Shown here piece by piece: positions 47,072 to 61,500 of a stretch of 64,000 nucleotides of DNA (within the stretch, counting starts at the first letter, position 1; the number at the start of each line of letters is the position of its first letter). The position numbers were made by a program, and so were the translations under genes. The notes beneath the pieces were generated by a model. The model made no database searches. It was not told the DNA's origin and saw nothing but the letters and a program-made list of their open reading frames with translations. The stretch covers positions 273,596 through 337,595 of the forward strand of contig NW_019217807.1 in the NCBI RefSeq assembly GCF_002571385.2, in the 5' to 3' direction. The stretch is from Stylophora pistillata (Eukaryota).

Positions 47072-50000
47072 TCAACTATTCCAACTCCAGCCCCCAGTTG
47101 TTGTAGAAGAGTTTGACCAAAGAGTGGATCCATCATCATACCAATTCCCAGGATTGTCAACAGGCTCACCCCACCCTGTGGGACTGTCAATGCCTTTGAG
47201 TTCCTTGCCACCCCAGCGATCTGGTCCCTTGGGTGGGTTTGGCATAGTGCCTGGGGGAGCCTGGTAACAGTCAGCATTTGTAGTTGACTTGAGGTTGCCA
47301 AGTGCTTGAATGCGGCTGGGTGTTGCCTTTGAAGGGGTGGCTTTAGATGCACAAGATGCCTTCTCCTTATGAAGAGCATTGACATACTGTTGTACCATAA
47401 CATCATCCATGTTATCATTATCACTGATTGCAATAATGTCCTCTAAATCTTCATCATCAATCACATGCACTGGAGCAACAACTGATGTGTCCCAATCATC
47501 CCAAGGATCTGAGTTGGTTTTCTCCTTCTGGGTATTGCATTTTTCTGATGTCGTGTGTAATGACTCCTTGTTTCTGTCATTGGGATTATCCCATTTGTGG
47601 CTTGCTCCTGTTGTTAACTGTTCATTGACACTCTCTTTTGGCTGTCCAGGTTGTGGCTTTTGTGTTTGGTAGTGCTTTCCATACCGTTTATTTCTGAATC
47701 GTGGAGGAAGATTAATATTTGAAGCAGAATCTTCATTTGCAGCAACATTTACTTTTTCTTTGTGGTTTTCAAGTTCATTCTGAAACAAAGATGCTGTTTG
47801 AATATCTCCTTGTGACTGGGTGCCACTCATTGAGGCCTTTGACCAGTCTGCGCCCCCAGCAGAATCCACACAGGAGTCAACTTTAATCTCTTCCTGTTGT
47901 AGTTGGGTAGAAGAGAAGCACACGGAGTCAGCAGTACTTCCATGTTTACCAGCACCAATGCATTTGTCAACAGTTTCCTGAAAAGAAGTCAATAACAACA
48001 TGTTAAGTTTTTTTAAAGGTTACCTGATGACCTCTCAAAGCACGAAATCAGTTAAAATATAACAAAGACATAGAAGGAGGAAGAGGCAGTGTGGCTGAGT
48101 GGTTAGAATGCTGAACTTGTAATCTGATGGTCCTCAGTTTCAAGCAGTCCACCCTGCTAATCACTCGATTTGTTCTTGGTTTCCCCAAGTTCAACTTCTT
48201 GTTGCACTATGTATATAGCCAACTAGTCTGCTGCCAGCTAGTTTTGATTTTTTTTAACACTGTGTTTGTTGTTTGTACTGGCCTTGACAAGCCCCATTAG
48301 GGGAGTGGACAATGTAGTATACTTACTTTTAAATCCTAGGCAATATTGCAAAATCCACAAATATACATCAGGTGAAATTCAACCTGTTAAGCAACTAACA
48401 CAGTACTGCATTTTACTGAGTGCAAAACCTTGCTAGATCTTTAAAAAATTCTGAAAACACCAACTGGGGGTGCCTTCTATCACACTTGACTGTGTAGATT
48501 TATAAAAATCCAAAACAACTAATTATACTATAAATGTATATTTTTATAACCTTTGCCTGGGGCAATGTTGTTGACCAGAGATTGGATCCATCATCATACC
48601 AATTGCGCGAATCCTCAACAAGTTCACCCCACCCTGTGGGACCGTCAATGTCTTTGAGTTCCTTGCCACCCCAGCGATCTGGTCCCTTGGGTGGGTTTGG
48701 TATAGTGCCTGGAGGGACCTGGTAAGAGTCAGCATTTGTAGTTGACTTGAGGTTACCAAGAGCTTGAATGCGGCTGGGTGTTGCCTTTGAAGGGGTGGCT
48801 TTAGAAGCACCAGATGCCTTCTGATGAAGAGCATTAACATACTGTTGTACCATAACATCATCCATGTTATCATTATCACTGACTGTAATAATTTCGTCCA
48901 AATCTTCATCATCCATCACATGCACTGGAGCTACTACCGACGTTTCCCAATCATTCCAGGGATCTGAATTTGTTTTCTCCTTCTGGGTATTACATTTTTC
49001 TGGCATCATGCGTAATGACCCCTGCTTGTTTCTTTGACTAGGATTATCCCAATTGTGTCTTACTCTCATCTCAAACTGATGTTCATTGACACTCTCTTTT
49101 GGTTGACCTGGCCCTGGCCTTTGTGTTTGAAAGTGTTTTCCAATGTGTTTATTTTTTAATCTTGGAGGAAGATTATTATTCATAGCACCATCTTCACAGT
49201 TACCAATATTCAATTTGTGTATGTGGTTTTCAAGGTTATTATGAAACAGTGATGCCCTTTTCATTTCCTTTTGCCACTGTGTGCTTTGCATGGGGGTTTT
49301 TGAACAGTTTTTGTTACCAGTTAATTCTGTATAGCAATCAGTTTGAATGGGTTTGAACCCATCTAGTTGTTGCTGATTGGAGGACGATGACACATAACCT
49401 GAACTGTTTCCATTTTCACCAGTATCATTCAACTACAAAGAAGACAATGTTGACAATGTTAAGTCAATGTTAAGTCATTATTTAGTTAACTGATGACTGA
49501 CATAAGAAATCAGACAATCAAAATCAATTAATTTTTTTCTGCCAAAAACTCTTTTGCATAATATCCTATCATAAATTCATACTCTTCCTTTTTTTAACGT
49601 TTTCATTCAGGTCTTTTGTTATATATGAGCATTACTCTCATCAATATTCTGTTCTTTTTTCCTTCATAATTTTCCTTTATTTATATAATAATAGTAATAA
49701 TAATGATAATATACATTAATTGAAGCTTCCCCTTAGGGGCTTTTCAGCCACAATGTAGACTAACTAATGTAGACTAACTACACAATGTAGACTAACTAAG
49801 AGCCCCACTAGCAGGAGGCAGACCAGTAGGCTATTTACAGAGCGCAGCAGAGGAGTTGAACTAGGGGCAACCGGGAACAAATCCAGTGAGTGGCAGGGTG
49901 GAGGACTTGAACTCGGGACACCGGATTACAAGTCCAGCACCCTAACCACTCGGCCACGCCGCCTCCTACATGTATCACTTGTTCAACATAGATTTTATTC

Positions 50001-53000
50001 ATTCAGATCCACCTATTGTTTGACTGTTTGCATAGTTTAACTTCATAATATCCCTTTTTGCATCTTCATTTTACCCCAGTCTTGTTCAATGTTTGTGTCT
50101 TTGTTTCCTTTATTTTTGTTTTGCCTTTGCCAGCTATTTCTTTACTTATAATTGTAATAACTTTTGTTTATAGTAACTGCTCCAACTTTCTTTCCTTTTG
50201 TATCTTAACAAGGAGTGAATTAAAGAGCACATTCATTGGACATGTAAAGAGTATTTTTTTGTCCATCATATAACCAGTGGGGATGTATTTGCACAAGTTG
50301 TAACTGCTTTTTCAAGTAATTGAAGGAGTGGATAATGGAGATTTGTAAGTTTGTTAGTGAGTTTAGATCAATTATGTTCATAAGTTACCTTATCCAGCAT
50401 TGCTGAGACATTTAATTGGCCACTCAGTATCAACTTTTGCACTTGTCTTCTTCTTTCAACCTCCTACAAACAAAAGCCAAAGATCAGAAAATACTTACAA
50501 TAACTTGCAAAAATGTGACTCTTGTAAAACTGGGATAGGTACACATAATCTAGTGTTTTCAGCATTAATGTTAGTATCCTCATTTGGCTGGAAATTACAA
50601 TAACCCCATAACATTTCAATTAGACTGAGCATTTTAAAAAGAGTTAATTCCCTGCAATTTTTTTAAATTTCATAAATTTCAATCAATAAATATATTTATA
50701 GCAGGGCTCCCACACATGCTTCGCGTGCATGGGGCAGAGCCCCATACCCATGGAATGTGGTCAACCTCTTTTGTTTGGTTGTCACGTGACTGACTGAGCG
50801 TAAGTACGTACATGCCTTCAGATTGTACGGGTAGGGTAGGGGAGACTATCAAAACAAAGGGAGGGGTGACAGAGGCGAGTCTTGGCAAATGCACATCTTT
50901 TATGTTATCATTGATATTACGAACTTGGGAGCTCTGCTTTTAGGCTTGACTAATAAATCTATATATTATAATTATCTTATTACTAGCTTTTATTAAAATA
51001 TGAACTTGTAAAGTGTATGTATGCATACATAAGCCCCAGTCTAATGAAAGTGTAATTATTGTTATTGTTATCCATTTAATTCACAAATGATTTTACAATT
51101 CGCTTTCAAGTGCAATGATTTCATAGTAAAACCCTTATTCTATAAGTGCCATGCCCTTCACTACATACATTATATTAACTGCCATTCAAGTTTTGGCTTT
51201 CACTCCTAAACAACAGCTGGTCCAAACACATGCAAGATCTGTTTTGATTCAGCTGTCTGCACAACCAGTGCAATATTCCACTTTGTTGAATGTAAGTGCT
51301 GGCTCAAAGACCATATAAAGTACCATCACCAACATCATCTGGAAAGTGCTTTTGTCAATGGCACAGAATGTTTAAACCATTCTAAGAGGGACCAGCAGGT
51401 AAATTCCTCTTGATCACTTCTCAATCAAACATTAAGGTCATGAGGAAAAAGGAAATGATCTCCTTGGAACTGAAAAAGCTCAGGTTACTGGACAAATTCT
51501 CCTTGTCAGTGCCATTGGAAATGTCTACAAAACAGTGTGGAAATTAATGTGCTAACTGATCTTAAGGAGTAGAGAGTTTTACCTCTAAAATATAAAATAT
51601 GCAAGTCAGTAAGTTCATCATTTTAACCCCCCTTCCCATCATTTGGTTGGATAATTAAAGAAATATATCAGCCACATGTTTAATTATTATTAACATATAG
51701 TAATAAAATTACCAGTATTAGTAAGAATAATGTATTTATTGTAACCTCTGCTTTAGGTACTGTCCGTGAAGATTCCTTTAGGGCTCTTCCTCGTCCAGCA
51801 ATGTATTTTCCTGTCAGCTTTGAATTATTCCTCTCCTGTAAAATAAAACATTTTAAAAAAAGGTGAGATATAATAACTCCTTAACTCTCAACATCTGAAT
51901 GTTAATTCTCCTCTCTGGCTGTTACACATTCCCTGTAAATTAATTGTGAGAATTTGGTGTTACATCAAGAATAACAACTTCTCAGGGAGAAGCCGGCAAC
52001 GAAGCCAGCTACTATATAGCCATTCCACCTTCTGGTTTTTGTGCGTTTTTCGGAAAAAATTCAATATATTATTCTAAAGGCAGTCATCAATACAGGTTTT
52101 TTTTTGTTTGTTGATATTTAGTCTCCTTTTTGGTTGTTGGGTGATTTTTGTAATGAGTTCTCACACAATTGGTTTGCTGTGCGCCATGGACAGAAGAGAA
52201 AGACTGGTGACAAATCTGCCTTGATTACCGCTGTTTACTGGATGACATAATTATGAATTCACAATTTGTCACATGAATATCAAAAAAGCTTATGATTTCC
52301 TCAGATATTGACACAATAACAAGTAAACCTGTGTAAAAGTTAAATATTCTTAGGTTGCCAATGATGGAAGATAGTTCAGAGGTACAAAAAGGACAGACAT
52401 CTTTAAAAAAGATGGCAAGACTTAGGCTGGAAAGTTCCATGTTCAATGATAAGTTGTTCAAAAGTAGCATCAAAATAATGCATGCAAAGACCTCATCAGG
52501 AAGTGCACCTATAAGATTACTTTGACAATTGGATCAAAACTCTTTTACAATCATATTCCATGTTTTACTTCTGGGGCCTGTAAAGGATCTTTGAAAACCT
52601 TTGAATTGTTCAAAATATTAGAAGACAAAGGTTTCATTCTTCTTTCTTTGACAAGTCTCATTTCAACTATAAGCAAGGAATTTCTTATTAAACAATTTGA
52701 ATCTAACACTTACATCACACCTCAAAACACTAGGACCCATGAAAAATTTAACAATGAAAGAGACTTGATAATTATCAAAGCATGGAGAGCAAATAGAAGA
52801 AATAAAATGCAGCAAGTTCATCATGATGGACCCAGAAAAAATTTGGAAAAATGAGACTTGATAAATTTCAAAGGATATAGATGGGACAAAAGAAATAAGA
52901 CTTCGTCATTGTGAAAACATCTAGATCCAGACACAATTTGGAACAACAAAACTCGAAAAATTGTAAAGAATGGACAGAGAAAGGAAGAAATAAAACGTAG

Positions 53001-53230
53001 CAACTCCATCATTATGTAAACATAGAGACGCAGGAACAATTTGGTACCATGAAACTTGAAAAATTGTAAACAATGGACAGAAGAAAGAAGAAATAAAAAC
53101 GTGGCAACTTTATCATGATGGAAACATCTGCAGTACAACTCTCATAGTTTGTTATTTAAATGGAACAATGTTATACACATAGGTCCTACTCTCTATATAT
53201 TTAAATTACCTTTCCAGGTTGGCCATCCAT
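47072..53230 (-). CDS. Uncharacterised ~657-aa disordered protein with duplicated LPPR(F/L) plus Ago-hook-like Trp module
   Basis: Coding exons 53210-53230 (accATGG, with in-frame stops upstream), 51746-51835, 50389-50463, 48551-49432 and 47072-47977. All are phase 0 and GT-AG. The last two exons are paralogous, long and stop-free. Confidence 0.8.
48083..48327 (+). mobile_element. tRNA-derived SINE, family A (CpG-decayed)
   Basis: TGGCTGAGTGG A box, a body matching the 49966 copy, and an AAGCCCC..GGGGAGTG tail. Confidence 0.8.
49715..49966 (-). mobile_element. tRNA-derived SINE, family A (well preserved)
   Basis: GGAGGCGGCGTGGCCGAGTGGTTAGG...GAGTTCAAGTCC head. AATGTAGACTAACT occurs three times near the tail. 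Confidence 0.88.
52790..53132. repeat. Degenerate ~100-bp tandem repeat, 3-4 units
   Basis: Recurring GAAATAAAA...CAATTTGG.A..A.GAAACT.GAAAAATTGTAAA.AATGGACAG. Confidence 0.7.
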
Positions 53231-58554: not shown

Positions 58555-61500
58555 ATGAACATTATTCCAACAGTGGATGGACAGAGCCATACTTTCCTGT
58601 CTGAGAATGTTCGTCAGCTGATTTGCGAATCTTTCGAAGGGCTTGAATGTGCTGGAATCAATGCGATCCGGGCGTCTGAATGTGATTTCACAGAGGATGG
58701 TTATTTGTTATGGGAAAAAATTGGGACAGTTCTTGGGCAAGGTATTAGAGAAACTCTGATTTGAAATATGCATTCCAGTATAAAATATATAGGCTAGTTT
58801 ATTTTTGGCTAGTTTGCTATACTTTGTTTCAAGCTAGTGCCCAAGGATCAAGTAAAGTGCGGATTATTCTATCTAGCTCCACTTCTCCGTTTATATAGTG
58901 AGAATATGTACCTATTGACTGAGTGGGGGGTCGGACAGGAAAATCTTTGGCTCGAAGGCATGACTTATGGACCGAGCGCAGCGATACGAGAGCCAAGTAT
59001 TTTCGGCCTGACCCAACTCAGTCAATAAGTATTTTATCGTATGATCACTTGCTAAGTTTTAAAATTCAAAAGAATTTGTTTTAACTTAAATAGGACGCGC
59101 TAGCTAGACTGGTGCGTGCGGGAAAACCACAAATAAGATTCTGCCAAAAAAAACTTTTCACTGTTCACTGCTGTCACTCATTTTTTTGCAACAACAGCAA
59201 ATAATGTTTCTTTTTTCCTTTTTTTTCTTATTTCAACAAAGCTGTACATATGCACTAGGAGGGTCCCCTAGACTCTTTTTTAAAACTCAATATAATGTAA
59301 AAATATATGGCCTTTTTTGTGCATCAGGCATAATATCCCAATTTTTTCCAGGGGTTAACCAAACCCCCTTGGCTCTTTCCTGTGACCTTTTGTTTTTGTA
59401 TTGATATGAAACTTACTAGTTGTCTCCCCATAGATCTAATTAATGATCACTCCAACTGTGATTATCATGATGCTGTGACAAGGTTACGTCCAGTTTGTCA
59501 TGCTGTCCACCAGGAGCTTATCTGTCTACAGCCACCTGAATTTGAAATGCAATACATGCCTTGTCTTTTATGGACTGGATGTGAGAGAAGATTTCAAGAG
59601 TGCTTCAAACTTCTCAAATCTCCAAATACTGCTGATAATAACTTGTGCCTGTTACTTTTGACATCTTCTCTGGAGCATGCACTGGGTGATGTGTATTTGT
59701 CATATTCTTGTGCACCTCATTGTCCATCTTTACTTAAAGACTTGTTAGCAACACAAGAACTGAAAGAAGTGTTTGGTGAAACAGTGATAAGGCTTTTGCA
59801 CATCTTAATTGGCCCTCCCTCCAGCCTAAACCTTAGGAATGTTTTGTGGCATGGCTTTGCAGGACCTGGAGAAGTTCCTATTCAGTAAGCATGTGTTAAT
59901 TAATGCACAGTATTAAATTCTCCTCCTCAGATATTGAATCTCTAGTATTCTGATTGATTCATGCAATCTAGGATATGAATAAAATGGGGAAATTTCACCT
60001 TTGGTGGAAAATGATCATGCCAGGTGTGCAAAGCTGAATTTTTTTTTAAAGTTCACTCTCCATTGCAGTATTTGAAAAAAATTCAACAAAAATGAGCTTA
60101 GCCAACCAGTATATTTAAACAATAGGCTACTTTCTATCTGTTTATCCATATAATAATCCACGAGGGATCAGTGTTGGGAAAACACTTGAAATGTAGCATC
60201 AGTATGTAGATGTAGTCACTAACAGGAATAATTATATTCAAAAGAGTGACCAGAAAGGAATTAATACTCCCTCAAGATCATTAAACTTTTCAGCAGAAAG
60301 ATCATGAGAAGTAAGAAAAATACATTTCTCAATTCTTAAATCTACATTTTCAGACTGAGCTAAAATTATAAGAACTGTCAAGGAGACAAAATTGTTGTAT
60401 GAGAAAACTTGTCTAGATCTTGGGAGAAAAAGGGTTCGTGCATGGCATAGGCAAGTACATAATATTAATGCAAGTTCACATTTTGTTTGATCTTTAGGTA
60501 TATCTCACTGCTGCTAGTGATCACTGCTTCACTGAATGTCAAGCTAAAAGACCCTCCATTTTGTTCAAGAGAGATTAAGAGGAGACCTTTGATTGCCTTG
60601 TCAACTTGTGCTGATGATAAACTTCACAGTGCTTTTCCTACTTTAGAACTGTGTAACATGACAGAGATATTCAATTTATTTTATTCAAGTTCTTTTATCA
60701 TTCCAAGTATGCTTCCATTGTGGCTTACAGCACTTGATTACTTAAAAGAGCAAAGGTATGTCAGGATCTTCATCTACTTTTTTTCCTTATTTGAAAAATG
60801 CTGTTGGACTTTCTCAAACCTTCCTGTCTTCAGCTTGATAGTGTTAATCATTTCATTTGAAAGGAATAAATCTGGGTCCAGTTGTATGAAGGGCAGACAA
60901 CGCTATCCAATAGATAAATTGCAATTATTACCGCCACATGCGGCCAAATGACAAACTACGCTCTCTAAAACACTCCTTTTCACAGGCCAAACGGCAAAGT
61001 GTGGGCTGTAAATGGCATTTGCCACCCACTCAAACATGAACCCTCAGTCTCTTCTACAAAACCATTTTATTTCTTTGGCACAGCCGTATCTAAATTACAC
61101 CCAATATATTCAGATTGGAGTAATGAACAGTTATCATGGAAAGTATGAAGATCGAACCATCACCACCAACCCGCAAATGCTGCCAAATAATCAAGAGTGA
61201 TAATAACCACTAAACATGTTTTCTTATTAAATGAATTTGTACAATTTGGCCTTGTGTATTGATAATAATGATAATGACATGACTTTTGTCGGACATATAG
61301 CTTATTTGTGTCCCTTGTAGCATCGTTTGCACCCCCGCTCTGCTCGGGCGTTAATGATGCTACTCGGGCCACAAGTAAACTATATGCCCTCCAAAAGTCA
61401 TGTGATTGTCCTATTCACTACTCTATCCACTGGATAGAGATTTAGTTAGTGCATAGTGTTATCCAACCTTTGAACAACTGGGGCCTGTTGTTTGCCTCAG

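What the first reader, a model, noticed from the sequence alone, without database searches (positions are those of the whole stretch)
47072..53230. Candidate 'Ago-hook-only' protein: GW182-like motifs in duplicate, no silencing domain
Seen: a five-coding-exon, ~657-aa low-complexity protein. Each of its two paralogous modules carries NLPPR(F/L) (47696-47710; 49157-49171), DPW(D/N)DW, GPDRWGG and PTGWGE-x7-WYDDGSxLW (47117-47182; 48575-48640). It ends in GGWSWNS and has an N-terminal AGRGRA. Knowledge (recalled, needs alignment): TNRC6/GW182 proteins have an N-terminal VPPRFR motif and Argonaute-binding motifs of the form PTGWEEP...DDGTSAW. They also have UBA, PAM2 and RRM silencing regions, none of which are visible here. 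RG motifs are methyl-arginine Tudor ligands in germ-granule proteins. Inference: this could be an undescribed bivalent Argonaute scaffold, or a natural decoy that competes with GW182 as isolated Ago-hook peptides do.
Basis: partly seen in the sequence, partly recalled or inferred. Interest (0 to 1): 0.85.

Follow-up and report, generated by a model that had tools for sequence, protein, structure and literature searches.

The report
Coral tryptophan-motif adaptor, exon duplicated
This is a real, expressed Stylophora pistillata gene (LOC111320977) for a disordered 657-aa protein made of two copies of a module found only in corals and sea anemones; its invariant tryptophan motifs resemble Argonaute-binding hooks, but nothing here shows that it binds Argonaute.

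Summary
RNA contigs from four runs give GT-AG joints for five phase-0 coding exons on the minus strand. Their translations tile the public 657-aa protein XP_022779461.1 exactly ("uncharacterized protein LOC111320977", Stylophora pistillata). Exons 4 and 5 are 70%-identical modules of about 300 aa, joined in one mRNA.

The family is a small orphan group in stony corals and sea anemones. It is normally a one-module protein of about 340-370 aa. A close relative has three tandem modules, and another lineage has added extra GWG/NWYDDGS.LW units. Five Trp are invariant in 20 of 20 sequences. The C-terminal half is under purifying selection (dN/dS 0.2-0.3) and shows signs of gene conversion between the copies. 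AlphaFold2 predicts disorder with short helices.

Pfam Ago_hook, all other Pfam models, PDB sequences and 1.84 billion representative proteins give no link to GW182. The likeness is confined to short strings (PTGW.E, D[DN]G[ST]..W). More than half of the invariant residues lie outside the "hook", so it is not hook-only. A complex prediction with a coral AGO PIWI domain gave no verdict.

My best reading is a multivalent Trp-motif adaptor with Argonaute as the likeliest partner (about 0.3).

The parts
53210..53230 (-). Coding exon 1 (7 codons, MDGQPGK; ATG at 53230-53228). The 5' UTR runs at least to 53290.
   Evidence: The joint 51835|53210 appears in 4 RNA runs. Translation and GT donor. Tiles P0180 residues 1-7.
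51746..51835 (-). Coding exon 2 (30 codons). It holds the family-wide AGRGRA motif at 51782-51799.
   Evidence: Joints; translation; conservation of AGRGR.
50389..50463 (-). Coding exon 3 (25 codons, EVERRRQVQKLILSGQ...). The Met of its MLDK is the start of RefSeq isoform X2.
48551..49432 (-). Coding exon 4, called module 2 here (294 codons, phase 0-0). It is the duplicated copy and ends at a new GT donor just after ...LWSTTLPQAK.
   Evidence: 70% identical to module 1. The DNA alignment shows that the duplication includes about 70 nt of the upstream intron and ends after LWS. The joints 49432|50389 and 47977|48551 appear in 4 runs.
47072..47977 (-). Coding exon 5, called module 1 here (301 codons plus stop). 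It is the ancestral-type terminal exon, starting ETVDKC... and ending GGWSWNS.
   Evidence: Its start and end match the single-module orthologues. Joint.
47117..47227 (-). Trp block of module 1: GPDRWGG (47207-47227) and PTGWGE-x7-WYDDGSTLW (47117-47182). It holds the invariant W255, W269 and W287.
48575..48685 (-). Trp block of module 2: GPDRWGG (48665-48685) and PTGWGE-x7-WYDDGSNLW (48575-48640).
47411..47509 (-). Module 1 central conserved island: DPWDDW (47492-47509), then an acidic run, then the hydrophobic-acidic stretch IIAISDNDN (47411-47437, SIM-like). A predicted helix, DDVMVQQYVNALH, follows.
   Evidence: Invariant W159, W162, D186, N187, D188. Helices at 158-166, 175-181 and 190-207 in the AF2 model. 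dN/dS 0.06-0.47.
48866..48964 (-). Module 2 central conserved island: DPWNDW (48947-48964) and IITVSDNDN (48866-48892).
47696..47713 (-). NLPPRF motif of module 1. The family consensus is IPPRFRN.
49157..49174 (-). NLPPRL motif of module 2. Here the F is replaced by L and the following R by K.
51169..51524 (-). Minor alternative cassette exon between exons 2 and 3. It has in-frame stops (poison exon) and probably underlies isoform X2.
   Evidence: The joints 50462|51168 and 51524|51746 appear at low depth, the first in runs X9 and X1, the second in X9 only. Stops in every frame tried.

Best explanation
The locus is Stylophora pistillata LOC111320977. It belongs to a small orphan family found in stony corals and sea anemones (Nematostella LOC5518933, Oculina LOC144634624). 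The proteins are intrinsically disordered and about 340-370 aa long.

The ancestral gene has three short 5' exons and one large terminal exon. In the Stylophora lineage the large exon, with its acceptor, was duplicated in tandem and in frame. The mRNA therefore encodes two modules in series, 657 aa in all. This part is shown here.

Each module is a string of short linear motifs: IPPRFR, DPWxDWE, an acidic-hydrophobic stretch plus a helix, LKSTxNAD, PPGTxPNPPKGPDRWGG, [ST]GWG[DE] and YDDGxxW. The protein ends with a C-terminal W. It is shown here that the Trp are invariant and that the C-terminal half is under purifying selection.

The rest is inferred. I think the Trp block docks its tryptophans, spaced 10-14 residues apart, into Trp-binding pockets of a partner. 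An Argonaute-family protein is the likeliest partner, by analogy with GW182/TNRC6 hooks. The other conserved islands (N-terminal AGRGRA helix, PPRFR, DPW/acidic helix) would bind other partners. That makes the protein a multivalent adaptor, or a competitor of GW182, whose valency is tuned by module copy number.

I put the anatomy and family assignment at about 0.95 and Argonaute as the partner at about 0.3.
For: - Gene and splicing.
- Duplication: (only two copies in the genome).
- Family and range.
- Trp conservation: W159, W162, W255, W269 and W287 are invariant in 20 of 20 sequences, and W299 in 16 of 17.
- Disorder: mean pLDDT 51 with only short helices.
- Selection: C-half dN/dS is 0.2-0.3 in paralogue and orthologue comparisons. 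The dS between the paralogous C-halves (0.26) is lower than the dS between orthologues (0.36-0.42), which points to gene conversion.
- Recurrent gain of valency: a relative has three tandem phase-0 modules, and P0029 and P0035 carry extra GWG / NWYDDGSSLW units.
- Trp contexts (RWGG, TGWGE, GGWSW, DPWDDW) are of the G/S/T/D/E-flanked type used by AGO-binding and CCR4-NOT-binding W motifs (PMC5314787).
- Literal likeness to TNRC6A 'PTGWEEP' (PMC7917804) and the hook peptide 'DNGTSAWG' (PMC3925969).
- Cnidarian AGOs do bind the N-terminal, Trp-bearing regions of GW182 (PMC5314787).
- The reported S. pistillata GW182 candidate had only one GW repeat (PMC3962355).
Against: - No profile or sequence search links the family to GW182 or Ago_hook.
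- The N-terminal AGO-binding region of Nematostella GW182 itself has no detectable homology to TNRC6 (PMC5314787). A retained ancestral hook is therefore unlikely, and the string likeness may be convergence or chance found after the fact.
- Non-Trp residues around the hooks are also invariant (KGPDRWGG.EL, N.YDDG). That is more than the flank-tolerant AGO pockets are thought to need.
- W279 and W297 are lost in sea anemones.
- Acidic Trp motifs are also ligands of CNOT9/NOT1, AP-2 and COPI appendages, and TFIIH p62.
- The complex prediction of a coral AGO PIWI domain with the hook scored 0.28, below the 0.34 mark. That is no verdict and not evidence either way.
Confidence: 0.33

Rival explanations
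1. The same disordered adaptor, but the Trp block and the proline-rich PPGTxPNPPKGPDRW stretch dock on mRNA-decay machinery rather than on Argonaute. Candidates are the CNOT9/NOT1 Trp pockets, as for the W-motifs of the GW182 silencing domain, or an EVH1 or GYF domain.
For: The W[GST]/[GST]W contexts match the definition of CCR4-NOT-binding W-motifs in PMC5314787. The PPGTMPNPPKGPDRW stretch gives a weak match to the XRN1 DCP1-binding motif PF18245 (E = 0.54). PPG- resembles the PPG-Phi ligand of GYF domains (PMC10187677).
Against: The PF18245 match is not significant and is absent for module 2 and for the other family members. PPGT lacks the hydrophobic residue that GYF domains require (PMC10187677). 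No partner was tested.
Confidence: 0.15
2. The protein is an adaptor in a pathway unrelated to RNA silencing. The invariant DPWxDWExSVV and (I/V)(I/V)x(I/V)[DS]DND stretch would act as an acidic-aromatic or SUMO-interaction-type motif, as in SIMs, TFIIH p62 ligands, or DPW ligands of endocytic adaptors. On this reading the GW-like strings are a by-product of composition.
For: The most strongly conserved and most constrained block is this central island, not the hook. From general knowledge, its form (four hydrophobic residues followed by an acidic/Ser run) resembles SIMs, and 'DPW' resembles AP-2 appendage ligands. There is no homology to any small-RNA factor.
Against: These are resemblances recalled from memory and were not tested here. 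They do not explain the invariance of three further Trp in the C-terminal block, or why that block has been amplified on its own in P0029 and P0035.
Confidence: 0.3
3. The protein is a pure decoy. It has no effector function and only occupies the Trp pockets of AGO in competition with GW182.
For: No silencing-type domain is present. Isolated hook peptides are used as competitors of this kind (PMC3925969).
Against: More than half of the invariant columns lie outside the hook, among them an N-terminal motif kept from corals to Nematostella. A pure decoy would not need them.
Confidence: 0.07
4. Exon 4 is a non-functional duplicate, or the two-module protein is an annotation artefact.
For: The duplicate has diverged in its N-terminal half (dN/dS 0.55) and has lost F in PPRF.
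Against: The exon 4 to exon 5 joint appears in all four RNA runs, and no exon 3 to exon 5 skip is listed. The frame is intact at 882 nt in phase 0. C-half dN/dS is 0.2-0.3, including against its orthologues in a relative.
Confidence: 0.03

Closest known systems
Argonaute-binding domain of GW182/TNRC6 (Ago hook, Pfam PF10427)
   Same: Both are disordered. Both have several Trp flanked by G, S, T, D or E and spaced about 10-14 residues apart. Short strings match literally: PTGWGE against TNRC6A PTGWEE (PMC7917804), and DDGS.LW against DNGTSAW of the hook peptide (PMC3925969). Copy number matters in both.
   Different: There is no HMM or sequence match. It has no Q-rich, UBA, PAM2 or RRM region. 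It is 340-657 aa long, against about 1,700 aa for Nematostella GW182 (185 kDa, PMC12768352). It carries conserved non-GW islands that GW182 lacks. It is restricted to corals and sea anemones.
GW/WG 'Ago-hook' proteins without a GW182 silencing domain, such as the viral suppressor P1 of SPMMV (PMC2904775); plant NRPE1/SPT5L and fission-yeast Tas3 are cited from general knowledge
   Same: These proteins use W motifs on an otherwise unrelated scaffold to bind or block Argonaute.
   Different: Those proteins have AGO binding shown by experiment. Here nothing is shown. It would be the first such animal-encoded cnidarian protein if confirmed.
CCR4-NOT-binding W-motifs of the GW182 C-terminal effector domain (PMC5314787)
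   Same: Both have WG/S/T or G/S/TW motifs in a disordered region that act additively.
   Different: In GW182 these motifs flank PAM2 and RRM. Here they sit in a very strongly conserved block of about 50 aa with fixed spacing.
Public annotation: XP_022779461.1 / PFX32380.1 / A0A2B4SU38 'uncharacterized protein LOC111320977 isoform X1' (Stylophora pistillata)
   Same: Identical protein. The five exon translations tile it exactly.
   Different: The public record carries no function, domain or family. No paper in the library mentions it or its orthologues.

Membership tests
GW182/TNRC6 | Match to the Ago_hook model (PF10427) or detectable similarity to GW182 N-terminal regions | tested here: not met
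   There is no Pfam hit at E up to 10 for the modules, short pieces, 20 family members or the 657-aa protein. Among the 17 hits in 1.84 billion representatives none is a long GW182-like protein.
GW182/TNRC6 | Silencing region (UBA, Q-rich, PAM2, RRM, PPGL) | tested here: not met
   No UBA, RRM or TNRC6-PABC_bdg match. Only a PPGT string is present, and it lacks the hydrophobic residue of PPG-Phi (PMC10187677).
GW182/TNRC6 | Direct Trp-dependent binding to Argonaute | not testable with these tools
   The complex prediction (Oculina AGO PIWI domain P0072 with Oculina hook P0006 303-367) scored 0.28 against a mark of 0.34, which is no verdict.
GW/WG Ago-hook proteins (a functional class, not a homology family) | Several Trp in a disordered region, flanked by small or acidic residues | tested here: met
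   The AF2 model has mean pLDDT 51 and is mostly coil. Contexts are RWGG, TGWGE, GGWSW and DPWDDW. Trp makes up 2.7-3.3% of residues.
GW/WG Ago-hook proteins (a functional class, not a homology family) | The Trp residues are the conserved positions | tested here: met
   Five Trp are invariant in 20 of 20 sequences (Fisher p = 9e-4).
GW/WG Ago-hook proteins (a functional class, not a homology family) | Binding to AGO that is lost on W-to-A mutation | not testable with these tools
   This needs a pull-down. See the next steps.
Hexacorallian orphan family (LOC111320977 / LOC144634624 / LOC5518933) | Full-length similarity of each module to the single-module proteins, with the shared N-terminal AGRGRA exons | tested here: met
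   E = 1e-104 to 1e-38 for corals and 5e-37 for Nematostella. Exons 2 and 3 are found upstream in relatives. The divergent DUF4209 neighbour is conserved.

The most novel reading that the evidence does not exclude
Corals and sea anemones have their own trans-acting Argonaute-hook adaptor, separate from GW182. It would couple (or compete for) the Trp pockets of AGO or PIWI to other partners through its AGRGRA, PPRFR and acidic-helix motifs. Its valency would be tuned in evolution by in-frame exon amplification: one module in most species, two in Stylophora, three in a relative. This could compensate for the GW-poor GW182 reported in S. pistillata.
Probability: 0.25. Interest if true: 0.75.

Novelty: new member of a known kind. 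Interest (0 to 1): 0.45.

Why it matters
Cnidarian small-RNA pathways are studied as a window on the ancestral animal system, and GW182 is so far the only known AGO-docking partner there (PMC5314787). If this conserved, expressed Trp-motif protein binds AGO or PIWI, it would add a lineage-specific regulator. It would also be a natural series of one-, two- and three-valent hooks, useful for studying how valency controls RISC partner choice.

Even if the partner is something else, the locus is a clean example of in-frame exon amplification with gene conversion in a disordered adaptor. If it has nothing to do with Argonaute, it is simply one more uncharacterised lineage-specific disordered protein.

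Tried and rejected
- Pfam on the modules, short pieces, 20 family members and the full protein gave nothing. There was only noise: XRN1_DBM at E = 0.54, ubiquitin at E = 0.064 on one orthologue, S4 at E = 0.01.
- A profile search of PDB sequences gave only a poly-Q artefact.
- ESM Atlas gave no usable hit.
- The structure model was too poor (pLDDT 51, pTM 0.20) for a fold search to mean anything, so none was run.
- Searching the genome itself for GW182 with PF10427, PF16608 and PF12938 found nothing. The controls also stayed silent and the search works exon by exon, so this does not show absence. I rely on PMC3962355 for the existence of GW182 candidates.
- Complex prediction with the Oculina AGO PIWI domain and the Oculina hook scored 0.28 and 0.18, below the mark. 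That is no verdict and not evidence either way.
- I looked for the Nematostella orthologue in the AGO1/AGO2 IP-MS table of PMC7713132, by accession and by computed mass. No match was found. The table uses NVE ids that I could not map, and the stored file is truncated.
- Accession searches in the paper library returned zero papers.
- The recalled TNRC6 strings 'VPPRFR' and 'DDGTSAW' were not found in any paper.
- Idea rejected: that the two modules are alternative terminal exons giving one-hook isoforms only. The exon 4 to exon 5 joint is present in all four runs and no exon 3 to exon 5 joint is listed. Contigs can hide rare isoforms.
- No exon-joined model was built or searched. All searches were exon by exon, by reference. 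The only joined sequences used were the public proteins P0179 and P0180, which the tools returned.
Full report
**What is there**

The region 47072-53230 carries a minus-strand gene.
- Contigs from four RNA runs of four studies give five joints, each with GT..AG ends on the minus strand: 53210|51835, 51746|50463, 50389|49432 and 48551|47977.
- The exons have 7, 30, 25, 294 and 301 codons, all in phase 0.
- Their separate translations tile, in order and without a gap, the public protein P0180. This is XP_022779461.1 / PFX32380.1, 'uncharacterized protein LOC111320977 isoform X1', Stylophora pistillata, 657 aa.
- I did not build or search a joined model. Every search was made exon by exon, by reference. 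The only joined sequences used were the public proteins returned by the tools.
- A minor cassette exon (51169-51524) with in-frame stops is spliced in at low depth in two runs. It probably explains isoform X2, which starts at the Met of exon 3.

**The two modules**

- Exons 4 and 5 are 70% identical in protein, E = 9e-132.
- The DNA alignment shows that the duplicated segment starts about 70 nt upstream of the acceptor and ends right after ...DDGSxLWS. After that point exon 4 runs into a new GT donor, while exon 5 continues to GGWSWNS and the stop.
- The genome holds only these two copies.
- Both exons are joined in the same contigs in all four runs, and no exon 3 to exon 5 skip is listed. Contigs can miss rare forms.

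**The family**

- HMMER against 1.84 billion representative proteins finds only 17 relatives at E < 0.001, none of them long or GW182-like.
- Word-seeded searches find about 30 clusters.
- Named members are 'uncharacterized' proteins of Oculina, Desmophyllum, Montipora and Nematostella.
- The typical protein has 340-370 aa: the three short 5' exons (with an invariant AGRGR) plus one module.
- A divergent DUF4209/EMARD_N gene lies upstream in Stylophora and in three other genomes.

**History of the duplication**

- In a tree, the two Stylophora modules fall in a clade (support 100/100) with ORFs from Tara Pacific coral metagenome scaffolds.
- Those scaffolds carry three tandem modules. All have AG acceptors, the first two have GT donors, and their lengths are multiples of three. 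The third has lost about 75 residues of the central island and the DRW.
- An outgroup coral has one module within 6 kb on either side.
- The dS between the Stylophora paralogues (0.44) is close to the orthologue dS against the relative (0.35-0.39) and half that against the outgroup (0.84). The first duplication therefore only slightly predates the split from the three-module relative.
- In the C-terminal half the paralogues are closer at synonymous sites (0.26; 0.10-0.15 over codons 176-265) than orthologues are (0.36-0.42). This indicates gene conversion.
- dN/dS is 0.2-0.3 in the C-half and 0.5-0.65 in the N-half, so both copies are kept under selection.
- In another lineage, P0029 and P0035 have independently added extra SGWG and NWYDDGSSLW units at the C-terminus.

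**What kind of protein**

- AlphaFold2 with the family alignment gives mean pLDDT 51 and pTM 0.20. Only short helices are predicted, at 92-98, 158-166, 175-181, 190-207 and 220-227.
- Conservation is concentrated in short islands. W159, W162, W255, W269 and W287 are invariant in 20 of 20 sequences, and W299 in 16 of 17. W279 and W297 are coral-only.
- Trp accounts for 5 of 28 invariant columns but only 10 of 301 residues (Fisher p = 9e-4).
- Many non-Trp positions are also invariant: DND, LKST.NAD, P.....R.G in KGPDRWGG, and Y.DG.
- This is the signature of a disordered adaptor built from linear motifs, not of a folded enzyme.

**Relation to GW182**

- No Pfam model matches at E up to 10, Ago_hook included. 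This holds for the modules, for 47-86-aa pieces, for 20 members and for the full protein.
- A family profile finds no PDB chain.
- The likeness is limited to short strings, two of which I could confirm in papers. TNRC6A has EEEPTGWEEPSPE in its Ago-binding domain (PMC7917804). The classical hook peptide is [22 protein letters not shown] (PMC3925969).
- The recalled VPPRFR string could not be verified.
- Mauri et al. found no detectable homology between the AGO-binding N-terminus of Nematostella GW182 and TNRC6 (PMC5314787). Descent from an ancestral hook is therefore unlikely. Convergence on the same kind of pocket, or chance, is more plausible.
- A separate GW182 does exist. Two candidates were reported for S. 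pistillata, one with PAM2 and P-GL motifs but only one GW repeat (PMC3962355).
- My own Pfam searches of the genome for GW182 were uninformative.

**Mechanism**

I commit to a multivalent Trp-motif adaptor.
- The C-terminal Trp block has Trp spaced 14 and 10-18 residues apart in G/S/D/E contexts. It is the part most likely to insert into Trp pockets.
- Argonaute is the likeliest owner of such pockets (about 0.3). CCR4-NOT or other decay factors come next (about 0.15).
- An unrelated pathway acting through the acidic-aromatic, SIM-like central island remains about as likely (about 0.3).
- The extra conserved islands argue against a pure decoy.
- One complex prediction was run, with the Oculina AGO PIWI domain (found through the Stylophora AGO exon) and the Oculina hook. 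It scored 0.28 against a mark of 0.34, which is no verdict.

**Verdict**

The gene is publicly annotated but uncharacterised. If it binds AGO, it is a new member of the known class of GW/WG hook proteins. Its most distinctive feature is the one-, two- and three-module series produced by in-frame exon amplification.

Noticed in passing
window 51169-51524 (-): A minor alternative cassette exon between coding exons 2 and 3, with AG/GT sites and stops in every frame tried. It is seen at low depth in 2 of 4 RNA runs and is probably the basis of RefSeq isoform X2 (599 aa, starting at MLDK).
   Followed up: partly
L005 7012-10482 (also L006-L008): Tara Pacific coral metagenome scaffolds carry three tandem modules of the same gene. 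The third (terminal) module has an internal deletion of about 75 aa that removes DPWxDW...LKSTTNAD and the DRW Trp. Splicing was not checked with RNA.
   Followed up: partly
window 49890-49963 (-) and about 48080-48200 (+): A tRNA-Thr(TGT)-like head of a SINE-type repeat lies in intron 3, and a diverged inverted copy lies in intron 4. RNA contig depth over 49750-49949 and 50750-50949 is 10-100 times that of the exons, as expected for dispersed repeats.
   Followed up: partly
window 59382-59888 (+): An exon of a DUF4209/EMARD_N gene (PF13910, E = 2.5e-19) lies upstream and points away from the gene. The same neighbour lies upstream of the orthologues in L003, L004 and L005, so synteny is conserved.
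   Followed up: partly
window 53290 and beyond: One RNA contig (run X9) runs on from 53290 into 86 letters that do not fit the window there. This suggests a further non-coding 5' exon upstream of coding exon 1.
   Followed up: no
G000:C1:2377041-2377784 (L009) and G000:C1479:8308-9051 (L010): Two nearly identical AGO-clade PIWI-domain exons lie on different contigs, with a third on C1184. They may be recent paralogues or uncollapsed haplotypes of a Stylophora Argonaute.
   Followed up: no
P0006 residues 42-69 (equivalent to exon 3 of the window gene, 50389-50463): The segment RRKQ.QQLILSGK..LDKET.. gives a weak local match to the ubiquitin family (PF00240, E = 0.064) in one orthologue only. 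This is probably chance.
   Followed up: no
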